A DNA stretch of 63,382 nucleotides, counting the filler, from Reticulomyxa filosa (Eukaryota; Protista; Foraminifera), in NCBI GenBank assembly GCA_000512085.1. It is 16 parts of 16 records of this genome, joined end to end, with 100 filler letters (N's around TTAATTAATTAA, not from the genome) between each part and the next. Parts side by side here need not be neighbours in the genome. Positions count along the whole stretch, not along the records: positions 53,115 to 58,187 come from ASPP01009001.1; 15 more parts are not named here. The stretch is one strand, 5' to 3'. Below the pieces are notes generated by a model that worked only from the letters and a program-made list of their open reading frames with translations, did no database searches and had not been told where the DNA came from. Below, in pieces: positions 3,191 through 59,849 of the stretch (its first letter is position 1; each line of letters begins with the position of its first letter). The position numbers and the translations under genes were made by a program.

Positions 3191-3790
3191 TATTCTTATG
3201 AATGTTTTTAATTTGTGTAAATGATTTGGAAAGATATATACAATATATATTTGTGCAAACTACGTTTCGTAAAAAACAAGTTTTACACATACTTGGATAT
3301 GTTAAAAAAAATTACTAAAACACAAACTATCATCATTGGCAACCAAAAGCACGTGAAAAAAAGGACTGCACCCAGTTAAGTGACAAAATGTCCAATAAAT
3401 CTCAAATTGCGATATTTCCAAATAATAAAAGTGAACAGATAAAGAATGTATCAGCACCAGCACAGTGCGAGTAAGCGCTATGCTTTCTCGCGAAAAGGCC
3501 ATTGTAGGGCAAGCCCCTATTACACATGGCTGAACTCTTATGGAACTGAAGATCCCTTTGGGTTAAACTTCTCCACAAACTTTCTTCACTTCTTGTTTTG
3601 GTCTTTCTTTCTTTACTTATTGAGCTATTCATTTTGGTTATTTAGTTTACTTTGTTTTACTGAAAGCCACTCAATTCGAGTAAAACCTTTTCGTATTACA
3701 TTTAGTGTAGCTATCTACGGTAGACACCCCACACCATCGAAAGCTTTTTAAGCGTTGGAACCGAAAGGGTTTGAATTCCGGGTTTTTAAA

Positions 3791-3890
3791 NNNNNNNNNN
3801 NNNNNNNNNNNNNNNNNNNNNNNNNNNNNNNNNNTTAATTAATTAANNNNNNNNNNNNNNNNNNNNNNNNNNNNNNNNNNNNNNNNNNNN
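3791..3890. other. Artificial contig linker N44-TTAATTAATTAA-N44 (first of 15)
   Basis: Identical 100-nt spacer with stops in all six frames, at 3791-3890, 10248-10347, 12529-12628, 16091-16190, 17302-17401, 25205-25304, 30586-30685, 32684-32783, 35127-35226, 46156-46255, 48051-48150, 51444-51543, 53015-53114, 58188-58287 and 61839-61938. Confidence 0.98.
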
Positions 3891-3961
3891 TATATATATA
3901 TATATTATGTTTATTTATTTATTTGTATAAACTTCATCAGTCAATTCAGCCACTTGTGCTT

Positions 3962-51443: not shown

Positions 51444-53379
51444 NNNNNNNNNNNNNNNNNNNNNNNNNNNNNNNNNNNNNNNNNNNNTTAATTAATTAAN
51501 NNNNNNNNNNNNNNNNNNNNNNNNNNNNNNNNNNNNNNNNNNNCCATTTTCAACTTTGATTCATACTCGGACCACATATCCAAAGGACTCTTTTTTTTTT
51601 TTTTTTTTTGTACGCCTTGTTTGTATTGGCGTTTACTTTATCCTTTGGTAAAGTCACGGATAGCATGAGCGAATGCGACCCAACGCTGTTTTGTCTCTGT
51701 CCCTGTGGTATCCTCTTGCGTTGATCAATTCCAAGTCTTCAAACACGCAACGTACTCCATTATTTGGCCATAGCTACATACCAGACCATAATCTTTCAAC
51801 AGCGCATACATATTGTCATTGTCCATGTGTGGAAATAAGTCATCCAACAAGTGCCAAATTTCATCCAACAGCATTTGCACTTCGCTGCCATTGGGATTGT
51901 GGTTGCTCTTTTTCACTGCATCTAAGACTCCGATGTATTTTTGCAGAGTGGGGGCAATGATGACCGATCAAGACATGACTCTCCCAATAGTTGTGTGATA
52001 CAATAGTTATTGATACACAAGATTTGCAAGACGGCAGCGCATAACTTGGTTATTTGTGGTGCTCTTTCTATGTTGTTTGTACTATTTGTGTCGATTGCTC
52101 GCGTTATGTTCGTCTTGTTCGCAAATACGAGGTGACGAGTTTGTGCAATATCTGTCCTTTCCTTCTTCTTCTTTCTGATTTTCCTCAATATTAAAACATT
52201 CAAAGTGACAAAAGAGATGAACGAGGGCTTTCTATTGTAATTAAGTTTGTTTTATTACCTTTTTCTGATTTGCTTCTCTTCAGCAACATTACTGGGACCT
52301 GGCTGCTGGTTGTTTGGTTGTTATGAAATTTTGGCTGGAAGAGATGTCTCATTGTTGCTTGGATTGTTTCCATCATCCTGTTCAGTTGGAATTGAGAAGG
52401 AGGGATGATGACCCTTTGGTAGTAGTATAAGCATTGACTCTTTTTTTTTTTTTTCTTTCTGATACTTTCGCAGTTGCACTTTCAGTTCCTTCCCCTTGTT
52501 CTTGCGGCGATGCTCATAATTCCTTGTTTCGCTTTGGTCCAGGCATTCAACAATTTTCTCGCACTGGTGTTCTTTCACTTTCTATTATCGCTAGGGTTGG
52601 AAGATTAATCAGCACTAACAGTAGACGGCTCATTAGGACGTTCAGTATTAGCCACTGTTTGGTTACTACTTTTTGTAGCTGTGGAGTCGTTGTTTTGTAG
52701 GGCTGTAGCTGCAGGTACATTGTCACACGTAGTTGCTTGTGCGAAAATGGGATAATCATATCAATAAAATATTTATTTTGATTTTTTTTTTTTAATAACA
52801 ACCTTTGCTGTTTTGTAATTGTGATGGCAGGTAATCAGGCTCGGTTAATTATTATGAAATACACAACTATGAATTATGTGTCTATATTTGAAGCATGTAT
52901 TTTTTTGATATGATTTGCTCGATCGAAAAGTTAAGAGATGAATAGATTGTTAACCAGAGGCAAGTAATCATCTCCAGTAGCAGAATCCGCACCATGAATA
53001 ATAACAATTAACATNNNNNNNNNNNNNNNNNNNNNNNNNNNNNNNNNNNNNNNNNNNNTTAATTAATTAANNNNNNNNNNNNNNNNNNNNNNNNNNNNNN
53101 NNNNNNNNNNNNNNCGATCCGCCTGACCACGCACACGGGCACCTGAAAAAACTGCCAGACCAGGGCGGTAGATAAGATCAAAACGTTAGTCGATAACTAA
53201 TTAGTTAGTTAATAAAAAATTTAGACATACATAGAGATTCGAGAGATACTGAACGTGAAACTTATTTCAAATAAAATATTATAGTAATAGTAATTGCAGA
53301 TACTATATAATAAATAAAAATAAAGAAAAACATAGTTGGAACGAACTGCCTTAGATAATTGTGTTACAAATTAACACAA

Positions 53380-55000
53380 AAAAGTGGATCATTCGGGCAT
53401 AAAACAACTGATGATATAGTATACTGTAAATATGAAATCCATTTAGATGAAAATTATAGCAATCACAATTTAAAATCTCTGAACGAAAAAATGTCGATTA
53501 ATAGGAAATTGATTATAAACAATAGAAGCGCGTATCAATCATAAATAAATAAAAAAGCATCAAATATGTACAATACATAATAGCACAAAATCGACAATTG
53601 ATAGCAATAATTTCGACATAGTCTGCAGAAATGAAAATTAAATTAAAACTAATAAAAAATAAATTATATTAAATTGCAGCATATGTAGTATTTACGCATA
53701 TGCATAGACTATTGAAAATTGAACCAAGCAACTATAAGTGACTATTAATGAAAAAATTGTCAAATAAGAAAATATTTTCCAAATTAGATATAATGTCAAT
53801 AAATCTGCACGTCATAATACGCTAGATAAACTAACACAAAACGGTATTTATCATCTCAAACGGGTTATGCGAACGGAATTTTATGTGATTTAGACTATAG
53901 TGTATATATTGGTAGATTTAGATTGCTTACTGATTTCAACAAATACAAGTGCTATTTACATTATTTTAACGTTTTACAGACTAAAAATGCGAATTCATAC
54001 AGAAAATAGATATCTTTTTTGGGACAGCTAATGTAGACAAATATGATTAAAAAAATATTAAAAATATATAAGCTATAAAATAAAAAGAAATTGGAACAAT
54101 TGCTAGTAATAGTTCAATAGATTGCACGTTTTATTTCTAATATTACAGAATTAACGGCAAAATTATTACAACTACATCAAGAGAATATTATTTGTAAATG
54201 GACTACAATACATGACGAAGCGTTTAAACAATTAAAAAAGACAATTGAAATATAAAGCTGCTACATCATCCAATACAAAATGAGCAATTTATAGTTAAAT
54301 TTGATTCTTCTGACAAATACTACAAATACAAGAATGAAAACTTGTTCCCATCGAATTTGTGTCAAAGAAATTTGACAATTATCAGCTGAACTGACATAAA
54401 TCAGAAAATGAGTTATATTCGGTTATTTATGCAATTCACTATTTATTACTACGTAAATTTACTTGGTGCTATTCGATTTACTTAATAACAAGTAAATAAT
54501 ATATTATCGATTTGTGCAATATTGTTACGTGATTTTTCCTTCAAAGCACGTTATTTTCCAGGACAACCTAATGTTATTGCATACTTCCAGTTAATCATTA
54601 TCAAAATCAAATAACAAAGCATAAATACAAAGAAGGTCATCTTAACGATATTCAAGGCCAAATCGAAAAAGCATTTGAGTTATAACTGAAAATAAGATAT
54701 TTCGACAATTATTCGACGCAAAAATATCAATGACATGACAACAAAATAAAAAATATAGTAACATTTGGCCATAAATGGACAACGACTTAAAAAATTTTGA
54801 ATGTTTTACCTGTCAAGTGACAAAAGGAAGATTCAACACAAAGTTTGGCGAAATTCAACATTTATATTCAACAAGCACATTCTAAATTATAGCTGTTGAC
54901 ATAGTTTGTCCATTACCTGAAACAGAAGATTGTCCGTTACGACAATAATAGATACTATCATAATATATGTTGTAGCAATTCACTGAAACATTACACGTTT
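53380..55000 (+). mobile_element. Decayed Ty3/gypsy LTR-retrotransposon pol (RT-RNaseH-integrase)
   Basis: Hand-translated motifs in order: CIDY*KLNQATISD (53701), FSKLDI (about 53775), KCEFIQKIDIFLG (about 53985), KWTTIHDEAFKQLK (about 54196), LLHHP..QFIVKFDSS, PIEFVSKKF..N*HKSENELYSVIYA, LRDFSFKARYFPGQPNVIA, IIAVDIVCPLPET (about 54886). Many stops and frameshifts. Confidence 0.88.
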
Positions 55001-55675
55001 GACAGCAGATATTTTATAGATAAAACAATTATTCACATCGACTTAACATTCAAGAAAATTCTAAATGCGCAATTAATGAATGTGCGAGATAATGCGAAAA
55101 AAGCGTAGTTATTGTATGACACTGGACGTAAAAGTTTTGAAAACAAGAATCGACATCGTCATTTATTTGATTCATTGTCTCGAAGCTACGAAAAGTAAAC
55201 ACGTTAGCAAAAAAATACACAAAAAAGAAATGATTAGCCAGTAAAATCACGAATACAACGAGACAAACTGTTATAGCCAAATTCGACACTGATAAGTGAA
55301 CAGGTTGCAGCACAACAACAATTATCATGACAAAAAGGTTTAAGAACTCAAAAAATTCATCGACAACTTGCAAAATTTTGTTTCAGTGTTGTATGTAGTG
55401 ACTCCCTCCAAACATTTCAACTTTCTTTTAATTTAATTTCACAAAATTCATTTTCACTTTTCTTAAAAACGTGATTCTCTATAATTGTAAGATGAAAATT
55501 TGAAAGTGCCAAAATAAATCTATCGAATAGACTCAGTCAAAATTTTGTTGCGCTTGGTTTTTGACGACAAGAGCCTTGCCATAAATACAATAATTTTTTC
55601 ACGTGTAAACACAACTGATATAAAAGCAGGACTTCACGTCTTGATTAAAGTAAAATCTTTTTATTGTATAAAAAG

Positions 55676-57144
55676 ATGAGCGATAGCAAGGAAGAGTACA
55701 GTTTGGAAGACGATATACACTTTGAAAGAAAACTTGAAGCTGTGGTTGTGTCAGACGCTGATTCCTCGTACTACAAGAACGCCAACGCAATTGTGGACAC
55801 TGTATTGAATGGACACAGCGAAATGACAAAAGATTACAAAATTTACGGAGCGATATTGTCTGGCTGTGTACAAAAGCAACTTGCCGTTCGTGGTGTGTCT
55901 TGTGGCTATTTAGTATTTTTTTATCATTTAGATGAAAGGGATCTGAACGAAAACGATCTTGCATCACTTGAAATGAGACACTACACAGCTCTTAAGAAGA
56001 TTGAGGCATACATTAGAGAAGCAAAAAAAAAGCGTATTAATGATGACGACGACATTGAAATATTGGGACGTTCGAGATCATTATTGAGAATAAAGTGGAA
56101 AGGGTTGAAATATCACATAGCAATAACGTGGACATTTTCAAAAAGAGAATACTGTTCATTTGATAAAAGCAGTCAAAACAATGGTTATGTATATCCGCTT
56201 TCTCAAATGGGATTGCGGTTCATTGCCAATGATTTGATGACCGAAGCGCAAGCATATGAAAGACATCTGAAAAATGTGCGCCGAGCACATAGACAATGGA
56301 AGACATTTTTCCAAGAGAGCATGAATGCATCATTATCATTACTTCGAGTGTATTACATGAGAGAGGAATTGGTTGGAAAAAACACTCGATTGGCAGTATT
56401 GTTTTTGAGATTATGGCAACATGTTGCAATGAAAGATAAACGACACCTTTCCAACAACTCTTTGGAAATTATTTGCACTTCTTTGTCCAATCAATTGAAA
56501 CTTGCACATCAGTCCAATGCCCCTGTTTTGGCACTTGACATTATCCAACACTTCTTTCAGTTGATTGTGCAATGCAGAAAATGCACCAATAAGCCGACAG
56601 TGATTGCGTGGCCATATGAAAGCAGGTCCACATCTCGCCACATCCAAAAGTGTGAACGAAGAGTTCGTCCTGGACGTGTTGTCGTTTTGGACAATCTGGT
56701 TGCTATGAGTTAAAAAAAAAAAAAAAAAAAAAAAGAGTGGGGGGAAAAAAAAAATATTTTGAGATTAGTATACGTTATAAAATATTGTAAGGGAACTTGG
56801 AAAGAAAATTTAGACAGTGGGAAGATCTATCTGTAGCATGTGATAATTCGTTGGAAATTATCAACAGTGCCAACACAACTCAATTCGTTGAATCGATTTT
56901 GGGTTTCTTCAGTTTGCTTGTTTTTATACTTTTCCTTAAACATTACTTTTTTTTTTTTTTTTTTTTTTGGAAATGTCCAACAGAACCAGCATGTTTCTAC
57001 TCCTACCCAAGAACAACCAATGCCACAAATAATAAAAAGCGACCAAATACACCATCCGAAAAAGATAAAGATACATTTGGCACGGGGATGTTCATGTTAA
57101 ATTGTTATCTTAATAATCCCCACAAAAGAGTCACACTCTTGTGA
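55676..57144 (+). CDS. OAS/DZF-fold nucleotidyltransferase-like protein, predicted catalytically inactive (3 exons, about 434 aa)
   Basis: Exons 55676-56708, 56792-56902 and 56984-57144 join in frame through GT-AG introns of 83 and 81 nt. Motifs: GAILSGCVQKQLAVRGVSCGYLVFF, KYHIAI, SLSLLRVYY..RLAVLFLRLW..LSNNSLEIIC, VVVLDN..RNL..QWEDLS...ESIL. Confidence 0.75.
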
Positions 57145-59849
57145 AAGGACTTTTTACGCTCCGAATATTTTTTACTTGTAATTTGAAATTATTATTTACT
57201 TAATAGATATTGCTGTTATTACTATTGTTTCGCAATTTATTGCGGAAAAACTTGCCGTACAGTTGGATTCTAATGTTCTCTTTTTTTGTGTGTATAAATC
57301 GTTGCTTCTTTGGAATTGTTTTGCTTTTCTTTTTTTTTCACCTTGTGTATTTGATCTTTTGCGATGAACAACGGGCAAATCGTTTGAGGTCTTCACCTAT
57401 TTAAAGAGGCTTCTTTGTAGTAGTGATGGACAAATTATTTTGATTTTTTTTGTTACTTTGACTGACTATTATTCTTCTTTTTACGTTTTTATACGTCACT
57501 CCAAGAAAATTCGCAATAAATTTCTTTAAGTAGTGAACAAAAGTTATTTGTTCATCATACAGATTTTTTGAAGTTTGTGTTTGAGATTAAACTTTCATAT
57601 TGCAAGTGAAATATTACACATTAATGTAAATGATATATCTTTGAGTAACGTAACAAGAAAAAATTTCAAGGTTCAAGATGTTTATTCAATATCTTTCTAT
57701 AAGAATACTGTTCGTGTCATGGCTAATAATGCAGCAAAACTAAAAATAAATTATCACGATTTGTAATGTTTAACTAATACTTCTTTGAAATAAAGAAAAA
57801 AAAAAGACAGACTAAAAAGTTGATCATATTACTAATTACAGCATAATGCCAAAAAAAGTTGGCACCTAAAATGGAAAAAACGAGGCCTAATTTTTTAATT
57901 AAAAGAAAAATATCTACGAATTGTGTAATTTTTAAATATGATCTGGATTTTTATTAAATCTTTCATAATTGTTTGAAAAATTCAATAATTTTTTCATAAA
58001 GATGCTTACTTTTTAAGTTTTTAATAATTTTTTTCAAATTTTTGCTTTTTTCGTTGTTTTTTGACTGCGTTTGTGTATTTTTTTTGGTATTATTAGCTTT
58101 TTTGTTTTACATTTGCAGCATTTATTAAAATTATTGTTTATGTTCTTTTTTATTTTCTAAAATGGTTACAATAGCCAAGATAATGTTNNNNNNNNNNNNN
58201 NNNNNNNNNNNNNNNNNNNNNNNNNNNNNNNTTAATTAATTAANNNNNNNNNNNNNNNNNNNNNNNNNNNNNNNNNNNNNNNNNNNNAAGTATATACTTT
58301 CCAAAAACGTATTCAAAATTTTTTTTTAGACCTATGCATAAAAATGCAACTTTTACAAGAAAAAATTGATTGTGTACGCAATGCAAGAAAAAAAAAACAC
58401 AGCAGATTTCATTTGATGAAGAGTTGCTTGCATATCTCTACAGCATTGTTGGTTTGTGTTCGTATACTCTTAATGCACTTGTTGATCTTAACCAAAAAGT
58501 TCCAATTTTTTTTTTGTCATCTCAAATAAGAATCGAATCGTTAAAGAATGGTTCTTTTGGCTAGATAAATGAACAAAACTAGAATTAATAAATTCTATTT
58601 TACTTTGAAAAAACTTTATTTCTTTAGTTTCGTGTTGTGTGTACTCTGTATTAGATAGAGTAAAAAAAGATATCAAAATAATTGTTTATGTATCCTTTTT
58701 GCAAAAATCTATTCAAATAATTGAATTTGACGTAATTTGCTTTCCAGTTTCACATTTTGTAGTAAGGGTTTTAATCTGCTATCATATAGGATTTGAGAAT
58801 ATGATGTCTTGTCTTTTAGAAAAAAGGAGATAAAACTTTATTAGCAGTGTATAATTTTTGAAGTTCGTGCATACCATCTTTTTTAATTAAAAACAAAAAC
58901 ATACCCTCAATCCAAGAAGAAAAAAGTCACTTTATGGAGACTTTGGAAATCTTTCGACTTTCAAAAGTTGAAATTACTTGATCGTTTATAGAATAGTTTT
59001 TTTTGTTTTGAGAAAACCATTATCTTTATAAAATAAATTAATAAAATTTTTTAATGTTTTTGAAGGCAAAAAAATTAAAAGTATTTTTGCTATAACTTTT
59101 TCATACAATAGAATTTTTTCAACTGAATTTCACCAATGGTATCCTTTGTGGCTTTACATCGTCTCCGACCATTTGCGAGGATTATCATTTTTGTTTCAAT
59201 CACTTTATTGGCAATTCTATTGTTTTTAACAGCCTCAGCTTCAAAAGTAAGTAAAACGAAAATGATAAGTCTCGTAAATGGTCGGAGACAGTGTAAAATC
59301 GCAAAGAATACCTTGTGGTAAAATTCCTGTGAAAAAATTCAATCGTATGAAAAAGTTATGCGAAAATATTTTTAATTTTTTTGCATTCATCAACATTTTC
59401 ATATACCATCTTATATCTAATCATTCTTTTAAGTCAATTTTTTTTTATATTGAAAATTACTAGTCTGGCTGCATTTAAAAAAATATTTGTATTTTTTTTA
59501 AATTTTATTTTAAAGGGGATTTTTAAAAAAAAATTTATCTCTCATCATCCAGATGTCAAAATGAATGTTTTTACTTCCGTTCAAAGTTTGAATGAATTGC
59601 ATGCTTCACTTTTTCAATCTCAATGTGTTATCTGAACGTGAAATCTTCATTTACGGACTTACAAGAACGACCTTGTTATTTTATGATACAATTAAACGAA
59701 TACAACTTTAAAAAAATACACACAACACAAATTTCATAAAATTTTTTTTAAATTTCTGTTTTGTAATTATTTCTTATAAAAAACTTTTCTTTATAAAACA
59801 ATTTTTTTAAAAAGCAAAAACTTCAATGGTACAATATCCATTTCAATGT

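What the first reader, a model, noticed from the sequence alone, without database searches (positions are those of the whole stretch)
55676..57144. Stand-alone pseudo-nucleotidyltransferase with mixed OAS and DZF (NF90/NF45) features in a protist
Seen: the 349-aa ORF is only exon 1. Two clean introns (56709-56791, 56903-56983) extend it to about 434 aa and supply the C-terminal helix VVVLDNLVAM|RNLERKFRQWEDLSVACDNSLEII...QFVESIL. Knowledge: human OAS1 has GS..KG..LRG.SDADLVVF (G62/S63, D75, D77), D148 in EFDVLP, LIRLVKHW, YALELL and PVILDP..W..LA. This protein aligns with the same spacing (G63-C64, C76-G77-Y78, H147, FLRLW, NSLEII, VVLDN..W.DL), but all three metal-binding Asp are replaced by C, Y and H. 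It also matches NF90/ZFR DZF hallmarks: DDIHFERK vs DDRHVMAK; GAILSGCVQKQL vs GVMRVGLVAKGL; SLSLLR vs ALASLR; QWEDLS...SIL vs QREDIT...KVLG. No dsRBD or zinc finger is visible. Inference: a dead enzyme acting as an RNA-binding or dimerisation scaffold, or as a decoy or regulator of an active OAS/cGAS-like partner. DZF and OAS proteins are characterised mainly in animals, so this could be an undescribed branch or an OAS-to-DZF intermediate.
Basis: partly seen in the sequence, partly recalled or inferred. Interest (0 to 1): 0.85.

Follow-up and report, generated by a model that had tools for sequence, protein, structure and literature searches.

The report
Dead OAS-like enzyme gene in foraminifer
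This gene of the foraminifer Reticulomyxa filosa encodes a protein with the fold of the antiviral enzyme OAS that has lost all its catalytic residues; it belongs to a clade of at least 15 such inactive copies, which makes it a modestly interesting new example of a known theme.

Summary
The ORF is real: ATG 55676, 344 codons, on Reticulomyxa filosa contig ASPP01009001.1, publicly annotated as a 345-aa hypothetical protein.

**Fold.** The AlphaFold model (pLDDT 75) matches OAS1 best: Z 18.1 over 279 residues. PAP, NF90/NF45, Utp22 and CD-NTases score 15-18.

**Family.**
- No Pfam family matches.
- The protein belongs to a family of about 37 database entries. All named ones are R. filosa.
- Two triad-bearing paralogues, P0020 and P0024, already sit in the OAS superfamily of the Culbertson & Levin 2023 CD-NTase tree.
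- BLASTP against P0020 gives E 2e-30.

**Catalytic residues.**
- Fifteen paralogues share SGC/CGY/H and form one clade with 100/100 support, nested among triad-bearers.
- dN/dS for this gene is 0.3-0.5.

**Gene model.**
- Intron 1 and exon 2 are supported by homology.
- The intron 2 donor is more likely 56912 than 56903.
- Exon 3 is unsupported.
- No RNA run was listed.

**DZF.** The "OAS-to-DZF intermediate" idea is not supported. P0020 matches OAS1 at Z 20.7 and DZF at 16.4.

**Verdict.** An independently evolved, expanded pseudo-OAS clade. A role as an RNA-binding or regulatory protein is inferred only.

The parts
55676..56708 (+). Exon 1: codons 1-344 plus the first base of codon 345. It encodes the NTase N-lobe and the OAS1-type helical C-lobe.
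   Evidence: ORF list. Identical to public protein P0001. AlphaFold model pLDDT 75, pTM 0.75. OAS1 is the best match, Z 18.1.
55859..55867 (+). S62-G63-C64, the position of the G-[GS] motif. Triad-bearing paralogues have GGS here.
   Evidence: Family alignment. BLASTP to P0020 aligns C64 to Ser. C64 is conserved in 93% of the inactive clade.
55901..55909 (+). C76-G77-Y78, the position of the catalytic DxD. It is DGD in P0020 and P0024, and ESD in P0023.
   Evidence: The same profile columns align to SDAD of OAS2 domain II. C76 and Y78 are each conserved in 93% of the clade.
56114..56116 (+). H147, the position of the third catalytic Asp. P0020 has EFDLLVAF where this protein has KYHIAITW.
   Evidence: His is present in 100% of the 15 inactive-clade sequences.
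56399..56416 (+). L242-W247 (LFLRLW), the family's 'LK.W' motif. It aligns to I/VKHW of OAS2. This copy has Arg where the family has Lys.
   Evidence: hmmsearch alignment to OAS2. K245 and W247 are conserved in both clades.
56709..56791 (+). Intron 1: 83 nt, GT..AG, phase 1, with an A-rich tract.
   Evidence: Sequence. Several paralogue ORFs stop 1-2 codons after the ...DNL.. strand. The spliced product is collinear with the intronless P0033.
56792..56911 (+). Exon 2: (R)NLERKFRQWEDLSVACDNSLEIINSANTTQFVESILGFF, predicted to form the terminal helix of the fold.
   Evidence: tblastn to P0008 and P0013. BLASTP to P0013 residues 169-207, E 6e-10. blastn to L001 3778-3922 at 73.8% identity.
56912..56983 (+). 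Putative intron 2: 72 nt, GT..AG, phase 1, T-rich.
   Evidence: The donor TTCA|GTTT is conserved with the annotated introns of P0013 (76 nt) and P0008 (102 nt). There is no transcript evidence.
56984..57144 (+). Putative exon 3: a 53-aa tail ending at TGA 57142-57144. It has no homology and its status is uncertain.
   Evidence: Frame read from the sequence. No paralogue matches it, and no remnant of the paralogues' C-terminal extension lies before the contig end.

Best explanation
The gene encodes a catalytically inactive paralogue of the OAS (2'-5'-oligoadenylate synthetase) superfamily of CD-NTase-type nucleotidyltransferases. It belongs to a gene-family expansion in the foraminifer Reticulomyxa filosa.

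Shown:
- The protein keeps the two-lobed OAS fold: a Pol-beta-type N-lobe, an OAS1_C-type helical lobe, and a terminal helix supplied by exon 2.
- The Ser of the GS motif and all three metal-binding carboxylates are replaced by C64, C76, Y78 and H147.
- These replacements arose once, on the stem of a clade of at least 15 paralogues. They have been conserved since, and the reading frame has been kept under purifying selection.

Inferred:
- Without any carboxylate for the two Mg2+ ions it cannot polymerise nucleotides by the canonical mechanism.
- It most likely works as a non-catalytic binder. By analogy with OASL, OAS2 domain I, OAS3 domains I and II, and NF45/NF90, it would bind nucleic acid or nucleotide and act as a sensor, adaptor or regulator beside the family's triad-bearing members.
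- The family's Lys/Arg of the 'LK.W' motif is retained, so phosphate or nucleotide binding is plausible.
For: Fold:
- No-template AlphaFold model, pLDDT 75, pTM 0.75.
- Foldseek's top hits are OAS1, E 1.8e-6, TM 0.56-0.58.
- VIA gives OAS1 Z 18.1 over 279 residues at 4.1 A.
- The ESM Atlas shape search puts an OAS cluster first, TM 0.67.
- The ESM feature search gives OAS1_C clusters 0.96.

Sequence link:
- The family profile hits human OAS2 as the only relevant PDB sequence (E 0.0031). The two collinear stretches cover the GS..DxD region and the LK.W..LE.L region.
- BLASTP of P0001 against P0020 gives E 2e-30.
- hhalign of the two clades gives probability 100%, E 1e-54.
- P0020 and P0024 are EP00480_P025644 and EP00480_P024262. 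Both lie in the OAS-superfamily region of the published CD-NTase tree (PMC10732462).
- The P0020 model matches OAS1 at Z 20.7 with 20% identity, clearly above all other families.

Inactivity:
- Motif table.
- The inactive clade is monophyletic at 100/100 and nested among triad-bearing members.
- The replacement residues are 93-100% conserved.

Selection:
- dN/dS is 0.31-0.48 against paralogues at dS 0.84-1.3, and the 344-codon frame is intact.

Precedent:
- Inactive OAS domains bind dsRNA and are functional (PMC4446440).
Against: - No Pfam model (OAS1_C, NTP_transf_2, SMODS, DZF) matches this protein or any paralogue, even at E 10.
- The only direct sequence hit to an OAS is marginal (E 0.003).
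- The model rests on a shallow alignment of 16 paralogues from one species.
- For this protein, VIA scores for OAS1 (18.1) and poly(A) polymerase (17.9) are tied.
- No transcript evidence was available.
- The 3' end of the gene is uncertain, and this copy lacks the C-terminal extension of some paralogues.
- RNA binding, nucleotide binding and any partner are inferred by analogy only. The heterodimer prediction gave no verdict.
- dN/dS of 0.3-0.5 is fairly relaxed. One close pair in the clade reaches 0.65-0.82, so some copies may be decaying.
Confidence: 0.78

Rival explanations
1. This particular copy is a decaying or non-functional duplicate (an incipient pseudogene) in a large, fast-turning-over gene family. 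It is not a working pseudoenzyme.
For: - It lacks the C-terminal 'IEHCF' extension found in P0008, P0013, P0022, P0023 and P0025, and ends in an unrelated 53-aa tail.
- dN/dS is only moderately below 1, at 0.31-0.48. The pair P0005/P0016 reaches 0.65-0.82, and P0016 is truncated.
- No RNA run could be listed.
- The family contains many fragments.
Against: - The 344-codon frame, the GT..AG intron and the exon 2 frame are all intact, despite dS of about 0.84-1.3 from the nearest paralogues. Neutral drift over that distance should have introduced many stop codons (inference).
- The clade-specific residues are conserved in this copy.
Confidence: 0.1
2. It is a member of, or an evolutionary intermediate towards, the DZF family (NF45/NF90/ZFR-type pseudo-nucleotidyltransferases), and works as a dimerisation scaffold.
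For: - DZF structures are among the significant fold matches, at Z 15.5-16.6. Structure-based identity is 15-17%, against 11-12% for OAS1.
- DZF clusters appear at 0.92 in the feature search.
- Foldseek ranks ILF3/ILF2 level with OAS1 for P0020.
- DZF proteins are also inactive.
Against: - No DZF_N or DZF_C Pfam hit, and no NF45/NF90 hit in the PDB sequence searches. OAS2 is hit.
- OAS1 outscores DZF by 1.5 Z units for this protein and by about 4 Z units for P0020, where identity is 20% against 9%.
- The loss of the triad happened inside the Reticulomyxa family.
- No dsRBD or zinc finger is present.
- The heterodimer prediction gave no verdict.
Confidence: 0.03
3. It is still an enzyme. The conserved Cys/Cys/His(/Tyr) set at the former Mg2+ site supports non-canonical catalysis or a different chemistry.
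For: The replacement residues are conserved rather than random: C64 93%, C76 93%, Y78 93%, H147 100%. The nucleotide-lobe motifs LK.W and LE..C are retained.
Against: - No NTase-fold enzyme is known to me that polymerises nucleotides without any of the three carboxylates (background knowledge).
- P0017 has H, Y, Y and H at these positions, and P0009 has N at position 78, so the set is not strict.
Confidence: 0.05
4. It derives from a poly(A) polymerase or terminal uridylyltransferase-type enzyme rather than from an OAS or CD-NTase.
For: Yeast and human PAP score Z 17-17.9, tied with OAS1 for this model. Mitochondrial PAP clusters reach TM 0.62.
Against: - Foldseek TM is 0.40-0.45 for PAP against 0.56-0.58 for OAS1.
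- All top feature hits are OAS.
- The profile hits OAS2 only.
- P0020 scores OAS1 at Z 20.7 and PAP at 17.1.
- The paralogues lie within the published CD-NTase/OAS tree.
Confidence: 0.03

Closest known systems
OAS superfamily of eukaryotic CD-NTases (OAS1/2/3; Culbertson & Levin 2023, PMC10732462)
   Same: - Two-lobed OAS fold, with OAS1 the best structural match.
- In triad-bearing paralogues the GGS-to-DxD spacing, the EFD.L strand, and the LK.W and LE.L motifs are as in OAS.
- Paralogues P0020 and P0024 are in the published OAS-superfamily clade.
   Different: - No Pfam OAS1_C match.
- This clade has lost the GS serine and all three catalytic Asp.
- Activation by dsRNA, 2-5A synthesis and an RNase L-type effector are unknown in foraminifera.
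Inactive OAS-family proteins and domains of animals: OASL, OAS2 domain I, OAS3 domains I and II, mouse Oas1b and Oas1d
   Same: OAS fold with an incomplete catalytic centre that is nevertheless retained and functional. OASL and OAS3 domain I act by binding dsRNA (PMC4446440). The OASL structure 4xq7 matches at Z 16.4.
   Different: - Independent origin in Rhizaria.
- All three carboxylates are lost, whereas the OASL paper reports loss of the third.
- No ubiquitin-like or other added domain.
- The clade expanded to at least 15 copies after inactivation.
DZF domain proteins (NF45/ILF2, NF90/ILF3, ZFR)
   Same: An inactive NTase-fold scaffold of similar size that can still bind nucleotides (PDB titles 4at8, 4at9 and 4atb). 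The fold match is Z 15.5-16.6.
   Different: - No DZF sequence match.
- The structural match is lower than for OAS.
- No dsRBD or zinc-finger partner domain.
- Dimerisation has not been shown.
Bacterial CBASS CD-NTases of clade C and D (CdnC, CdnD)
   Same: Same fold, at Z about 15-15.6 for this protein and 18.0 for P0020. The published tree roots the OAS superfamily in bacterial clade C.
   Different: - Eukaryotic gene with spliceosomal introns.
- No SMODS match.
- No adjacent effector gene.
- Catalytic residues lost.

Membership tests
OAS superfamily (eukaryotic CD-NTases) | Pol-beta-type NTase N-lobe plus OAS1_C-type helical C-lobe | tested here: met
   OAS1 is the best match: Foldseek E 1.8e-6, VIA Z 18.1 over 279 residues, Atlas TM 0.67. 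Paralogue P0020 reaches Z 20.7.
OAS superfamily (eukaryotic CD-NTases) | Match to the Pfam OAS1_C model (PF10421), used in the literature to label the superfamily | tested here: not met
   No hit at E up to 10 for this protein or for 25 paralogues. The five published R. filosa members lack it too.
OAS superfamily (eukaryotic CD-NTases) | Sequence homology to accepted members | tested here: met
   BLASTP to P0020, E 2e-30. hhalign probability 100%. P0020 and P0024 are in the published OAS clade. The family profile against OAS2 gives E 0.0031.
OAS superfamily (eukaryotic CD-NTases) | Catalytic G-[GS] motif plus three metal-binding carboxylates (DxD and D) | tested here: not met
   SGC / CGY / H, where paralogues have GGS / DGD / D.
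OAS superfamily (eukaryotic CD-NTases) | dsRNA-activated synthesis of 2'-5' oligoadenylates | not testable with these tools
   Needs a biochemical assay.
DZF family (NF45/NF90/ZFR) | Match to the DZF_N or DZF_C models, or to NF45/NF90 sequences | tested here: not met
   No Pfam hit. No NF45 or NF90 chain in the PDB sequence searches at E up to 10.
DZF family (NF45/NF90/ZFR) | DZF structures are the closest fold relatives | tested here: not met
   Z 15.5-16.6 against 18.1 for OAS1. For P0020, Z 16.4 against 20.7.
DZF family (NF45/NF90/ZFR) | Dimerisation through the DZF domain; association with dsRBD or zinc fingers | tested here: inconclusive
   No such domains in the protein. One heterodimer prediction with P0020 gave no verdict.
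Canonical poly(A) polymerase / TENT family | PAP_central or PAP_assoc sequence match and closest fold | tested here: not met
   No Pfam hit. The fold match is tied for this protein (Z 17.9) but lower for P0020 (17.1 against 20.7).

The most novel reading that the evidence does not exclude
After losing catalysis, the clade was rebuilt and multiplied as a set of non-catalytic sensors or decoys in a foraminiferal OAS-type defence pathway. In this reading the former two-Mg2+ site has become a conserved Cys-Cys-His(-Tyr) centre (C64, C76, H147, Y78) that binds a transition metal such as zinc, or senses redox state. That would be a new use of the NTase active-site pocket.
Probability: 0.07. Interest if true: 0.7.

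Novelty: new member of a known kind. Interest (0 to 1): 0.4.

Why it matters
OAS-type enzymes are thought to be ancient eukaryotic immune proteins, but almost nothing is known about them outside animals.

In this foraminifer most of the OAS-like family consists of copies that lost the whole catalytic centre once. Those copies were then kept and multiplied. This parallels OASL and the inactive domains of OAS2 and OAS3 in vertebrates, and it arose independently.

The result gives a tractable comparison of triad-bearing and inactive paralogues within one genome, useful for asking what inactive OAS scaffolds do. It also shows that Pfam-based surveys miss this branch.

The public annotation of this gene, and of several paralogues, omits exon 2.

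Tried and rejected
- **Pfam.** Scans of this protein, exon 2 and 25 paralogues found nothing relevant. The weak DASH_Ask1 and DUF7742 hits are below threshold.
- **PDB sequence searches.** The single protein and the alignment of close paralogues gave only chance hits, Ask1 and PSK.
- **RNA evidence.** No sequencing run could be listed.
- **Heterodimer prediction.** P0001 with P0020 gave no verdict (ipSAE 0.00). This is neither support nor evidence against binding.
- **C-terminal extension.** A tblastn search for the paralogues' C-terminal extension, or any remnant of it, downstream of exon 2 found nothing up to the contig end. The extension is poorly conserved apart from 'IEHCF' and was not folded.
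- **Surroundings.** No tandem repeats and no Rfam match in the piece. No second gene was called on the contig.
- **P0020 as query.** A word-based homologue search found only paralogues.
- **Viral contigs.** The scan for the metagenomic homologue P0033 found nothing. The alignment-based scan could not be run.
- **Joined protein.** The spliced protein (exons 1+2+3) was deliberately not assembled, searched or folded.
Full report
**Observation.**
The piece (53115-58187) is the whole 5073-bp contig ASPP01009001.1 of the Reticulomyxa filosa assembly GCA_000512085.1. The only gene called on it is a single-exon 345-aa 'hypothetical protein'.

The + strand ORF 55664-56713 is present. It has 349 aa from a TTG, or 345 aa from ATG 55676. 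GC content rises from 0.24-0.30 in the flanks to 0.36-0.42 over the ORF. The piece holds no tandem repeat and no Rfam match.

**Family.**
A word-indexed search of 5.8 billion proteins found 15 relatives, all from R. filosa, at 38-64% identity. A profile search of 1.84 billion cluster representatives found 26. Together these give 37 different entries. All named ones are R. filosa; two come from metagenomes. Several entries are fragments.

One 9.6-kb contig (L001) carries three members: P0017, P0002 and P0012. No Pfam family matches this protein or any of 25 relatives, even at E 10.

**Fold.**
A no-template AlphaFold2 model built on the 16-paralogue alignment has mean pLDDT 75 and pTM 0.75. Its order of elements is helix-helix, two strands, a long helix, three strands, and then a helical bundle.

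| Search | OAS result | Other families |
|---|---|---|
| Foldseek vs PDB | OAS1 first, E 1.8e-6, TM 0.56-0.58; then OAS3 domain I | CdnC, Utp22, PAP, NF90/NF45 follow |
| VIA-align | OAS1 Z 18.1 (279 residues, 4.1 A) | PAP 17.9; ILF3/ILF2 16.6; OASL 16.4; Utp22 16.0; CD-NTases about 15 |
| ESM Atlas, by shape | OAS cluster first, TM 0.67 over 292 residues | mitochondrial PAP cluster 0.62 |
| ESM Atlas, by features | OAS1_C clusters 0.96 | DZF 0.92; CBASS SMODS 0.90-0.92 |

**Link to OAS by sequence and by the literature.**
A profile of 22 family members hits one relevant PDB sequence, human OAS2 (E 0.0031). The match has collinear stretches over the GS..DxD region and over the 'LK.W ... LE.L' region. 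Within it, the family columns holding C76 and Y78 lie under SDAD of the active OAS2 domain.

The more distant R. filosa paralogues keep the catalytic signature:
- P0020 and P0024 have GGS / DGD / D.
- P0023 has GGS / ESD / D.

P0020 is ETO22742 (EukProt EP00480_P025644) and P0024 is ETO21360 (EP00480_P024262). Both, with three further R. filosa sequences, are in the supplementary alignments and trees of Culbertson & Levin 2023 (PMC10732462). There the R. filosa clade sits among dinoflagellate, chlorophyte, diatom and metazoan sequences beside bacterial clade C. That is the paper's OAS superfamily, reported in 8 of 12 eukaryotic supergroups. Those five sequences also lack an OAS1_C Pfam hit.

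This protein is unambiguously homologous to them:
- BLASTP against P0020 gives E 2e-30, 26% identity over 330 residues.
- hhalign between the two clades gives probability 100%, E 1.2e-54.

A second model, of P0020 (pLDDT 74), matches OAS1 at Z 20.0-20.7 with 19-20% identity. Other families fall clearly below: OASL 18.7, CdnD 18.0, PAP 17.1, cGAS 16.7 and ILF2/ILF3 16.4.

**Catalytic centre.**
In the pairwise alignment with P0020, C64 aligns to Ser, C76 and Y78 to the two Asp of DGD, and H147 to the Asp of EFDLL.

Fifteen sequences share SGC / CGY / H, with two variants: P0009 has CGN, and P0017 has SGH / YGY.

In a maximum-likelihood tree they form one clade with 100/100 support on a long stem (0.88). 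The clade is sister to P0023+P0028 (93/84). It is nested among triad-bearing members when the tree is rooted on the metagenomic P0033. Two caveats apply: that root is a long branch, and further independent losses occur in P0022, P0025, P0026, P0028 and P0031.

The replacement residues are themselves conserved in the clade: H147 100%; C64, C76 and Y78 93% each. Motifs shared with OAS (G63, Q66, K245/R, W247, E264) are kept in both clades. Clade HMMs assign 23 of the 37 entries to the inactive clade.

**Selection.**
dN/dS of this gene against paralogues is 0.31-0.48, at dS 0.84-1.3. The pair P0014/P0015 gives 0.31-0.40. The pair P0005/P0016 gives 0.65-0.82, and P0016 is truncated.

A 344-codon frame that is still intact at that divergence argues for purifying selection on this copy. 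This is an inference.

**Gene model.**
*Intron 1* (56709-56791) is GT..AG and phase 1. Exon 2 is clearly coding:
- It matches P0013 residues 169-207 at 46% identity over all 39 aa, E 6e-10.
- It matches P0008.
- It matches the unannotated region L001 3778-3922 at 73.8% nucleotide identity.
- It matches the intronless P0033, where the same NI.RKF..W..L motif follows the ...ADP... strand in one continuous ORF.

*Intron 2.* The annotated introns of P0013 and P0008 start at TT(C/A)A|GTTT. With the acceptor at 56983 the intron is 72 nt. All three options (either donor, or retention) keep the same frame and end at TGA 57142-57144.

*Exon 3.* The resulting 53-aa tail resembles nothing. In P0008 and P0013 a 164-184-aa extension with an 'IEHCF' motif follows at this point. 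No trace of that extension lies before the contig end.

No RNA run could be listed, so no junction has been observed.

**DZF question.**
DZF structures are genuine fold relatives (Z 15.5-16.6). In structure-based alignments they show slightly higher identity to this protein than OAS1 does: 15-17% against 11-12%. Foldseek ranks them level with OAS1 for P0020.

Against a specific DZF link:
- No sequence method returns DZF, while OAS2 is returned.
- VIA puts OAS1 about 4 Z units above DZF for P0020.
- The loss of the triad is internal to the Reticulomyxa family.

The resemblance is best read as the general kinship of NTase-fold families, plus convergence in being inactive. It does not indicate an intermediate.

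**How it most likely works.**
Shown: an OAS-type scaffold without any of the carboxylates that hold the two catalytic Mg2+ ions.

Inferred: it does no polymerisation. It probably acts by binding nucleic acid or nucleotide, as a sensor, adaptor or regulator of an OAS-like pathway. The precedent is OASL and OAS3 domain I, where inactive OAS domains work as dsRNA binders (PMC4446440).

The expansion after inactivation, the clustering of copies and the moderately relaxed constraint fit a defence-type gene family, but they do not prove one. A heterodimer prediction with P0020 gave no verdict.

**Novelty.**
The triad-bearing part of the family was already catalogued, without comment, in a pan-eukaryotic survey. 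Inactive OAS paralogues are well known in animals.

New here:
- the inactive clade itself;
- its single origin and its size;
- its conserved C/C/Y/H replacements;
- the corrected gene model.

I class it as a new, independently evolved member of a known kind, of moderate interest.

Noticed in passing
L006:9241-11268 (TARA Oceans scaffold, 18,962 bp); also L007: A distant intronless homologue (P0033, 675 aa, GGS/NGD/D) lies on a marine metagenome scaffold. The scaffold is densely packed with small intronless ORFs, none of which had a Pfam hit on record. Of the eight largest rescanned here, one gave a weak SPRY match and the rest nothing. The layout looks more like a large virus or a compact protist genome than like R. 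filosa. A viral-contig scan found no relative.
   Followed up: partly
L001:1-9663: Three inactive-clade genes (P0017, P0002, P0012) lie in alternating orientation on one 9.6-kb contig, so the family is locally clustered. The annotated P0002 model lacks its exon 2, which lies at 3778-3922.
   Followed up: partly
L004:2032-2737 and L005:120-827: The close paralogues P0005 and P0016 each have a Yippee-Mis18 domain gene directly upstream. This points to a segmental duplication that included the neighbour. P0016 is truncated, and dN/dS for the pair is 0.65-0.82.
   Followed up: partly
L010:60-1845 (P0013): The public model is named 'Casein kinase II regulatory subunit', but its first 207 residues belong to this OAS-like family. 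No CK2-beta Pfam hit appeared in the scan. Its last exon has a counterpart downstream of P0002 in L001. The name is probably wrong, or the gene model is chimeric.
   Followed up: partly
window 57891-57982: A 93-nt stretch downstream of the gene is 85% identical to L002 82-172 on the opposite strand, which partly overlaps another called gene. It is probably a short dispersed repeat.
   Followed up: no
window 56713-56736 and 56946-56968: Both introns carry long homopolymer runs, poly-A in intron 1 and poly-T in intron 2. Paralogue introns have similar A/T or TA runs (L005).
   Followed up: no
window 56903-56983: If intron 2 were retained, the in-frame sequence would add a strongly hydrophobic, Phe-rich segment (GFFSLLVFILFLKHYFFFFFFFW). 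The annotated P0008 and P0012 also end in hydrophobic tails. These could be tail-anchor-like ends, or simply read-through of T-rich intron sequence.
   Followed up: no
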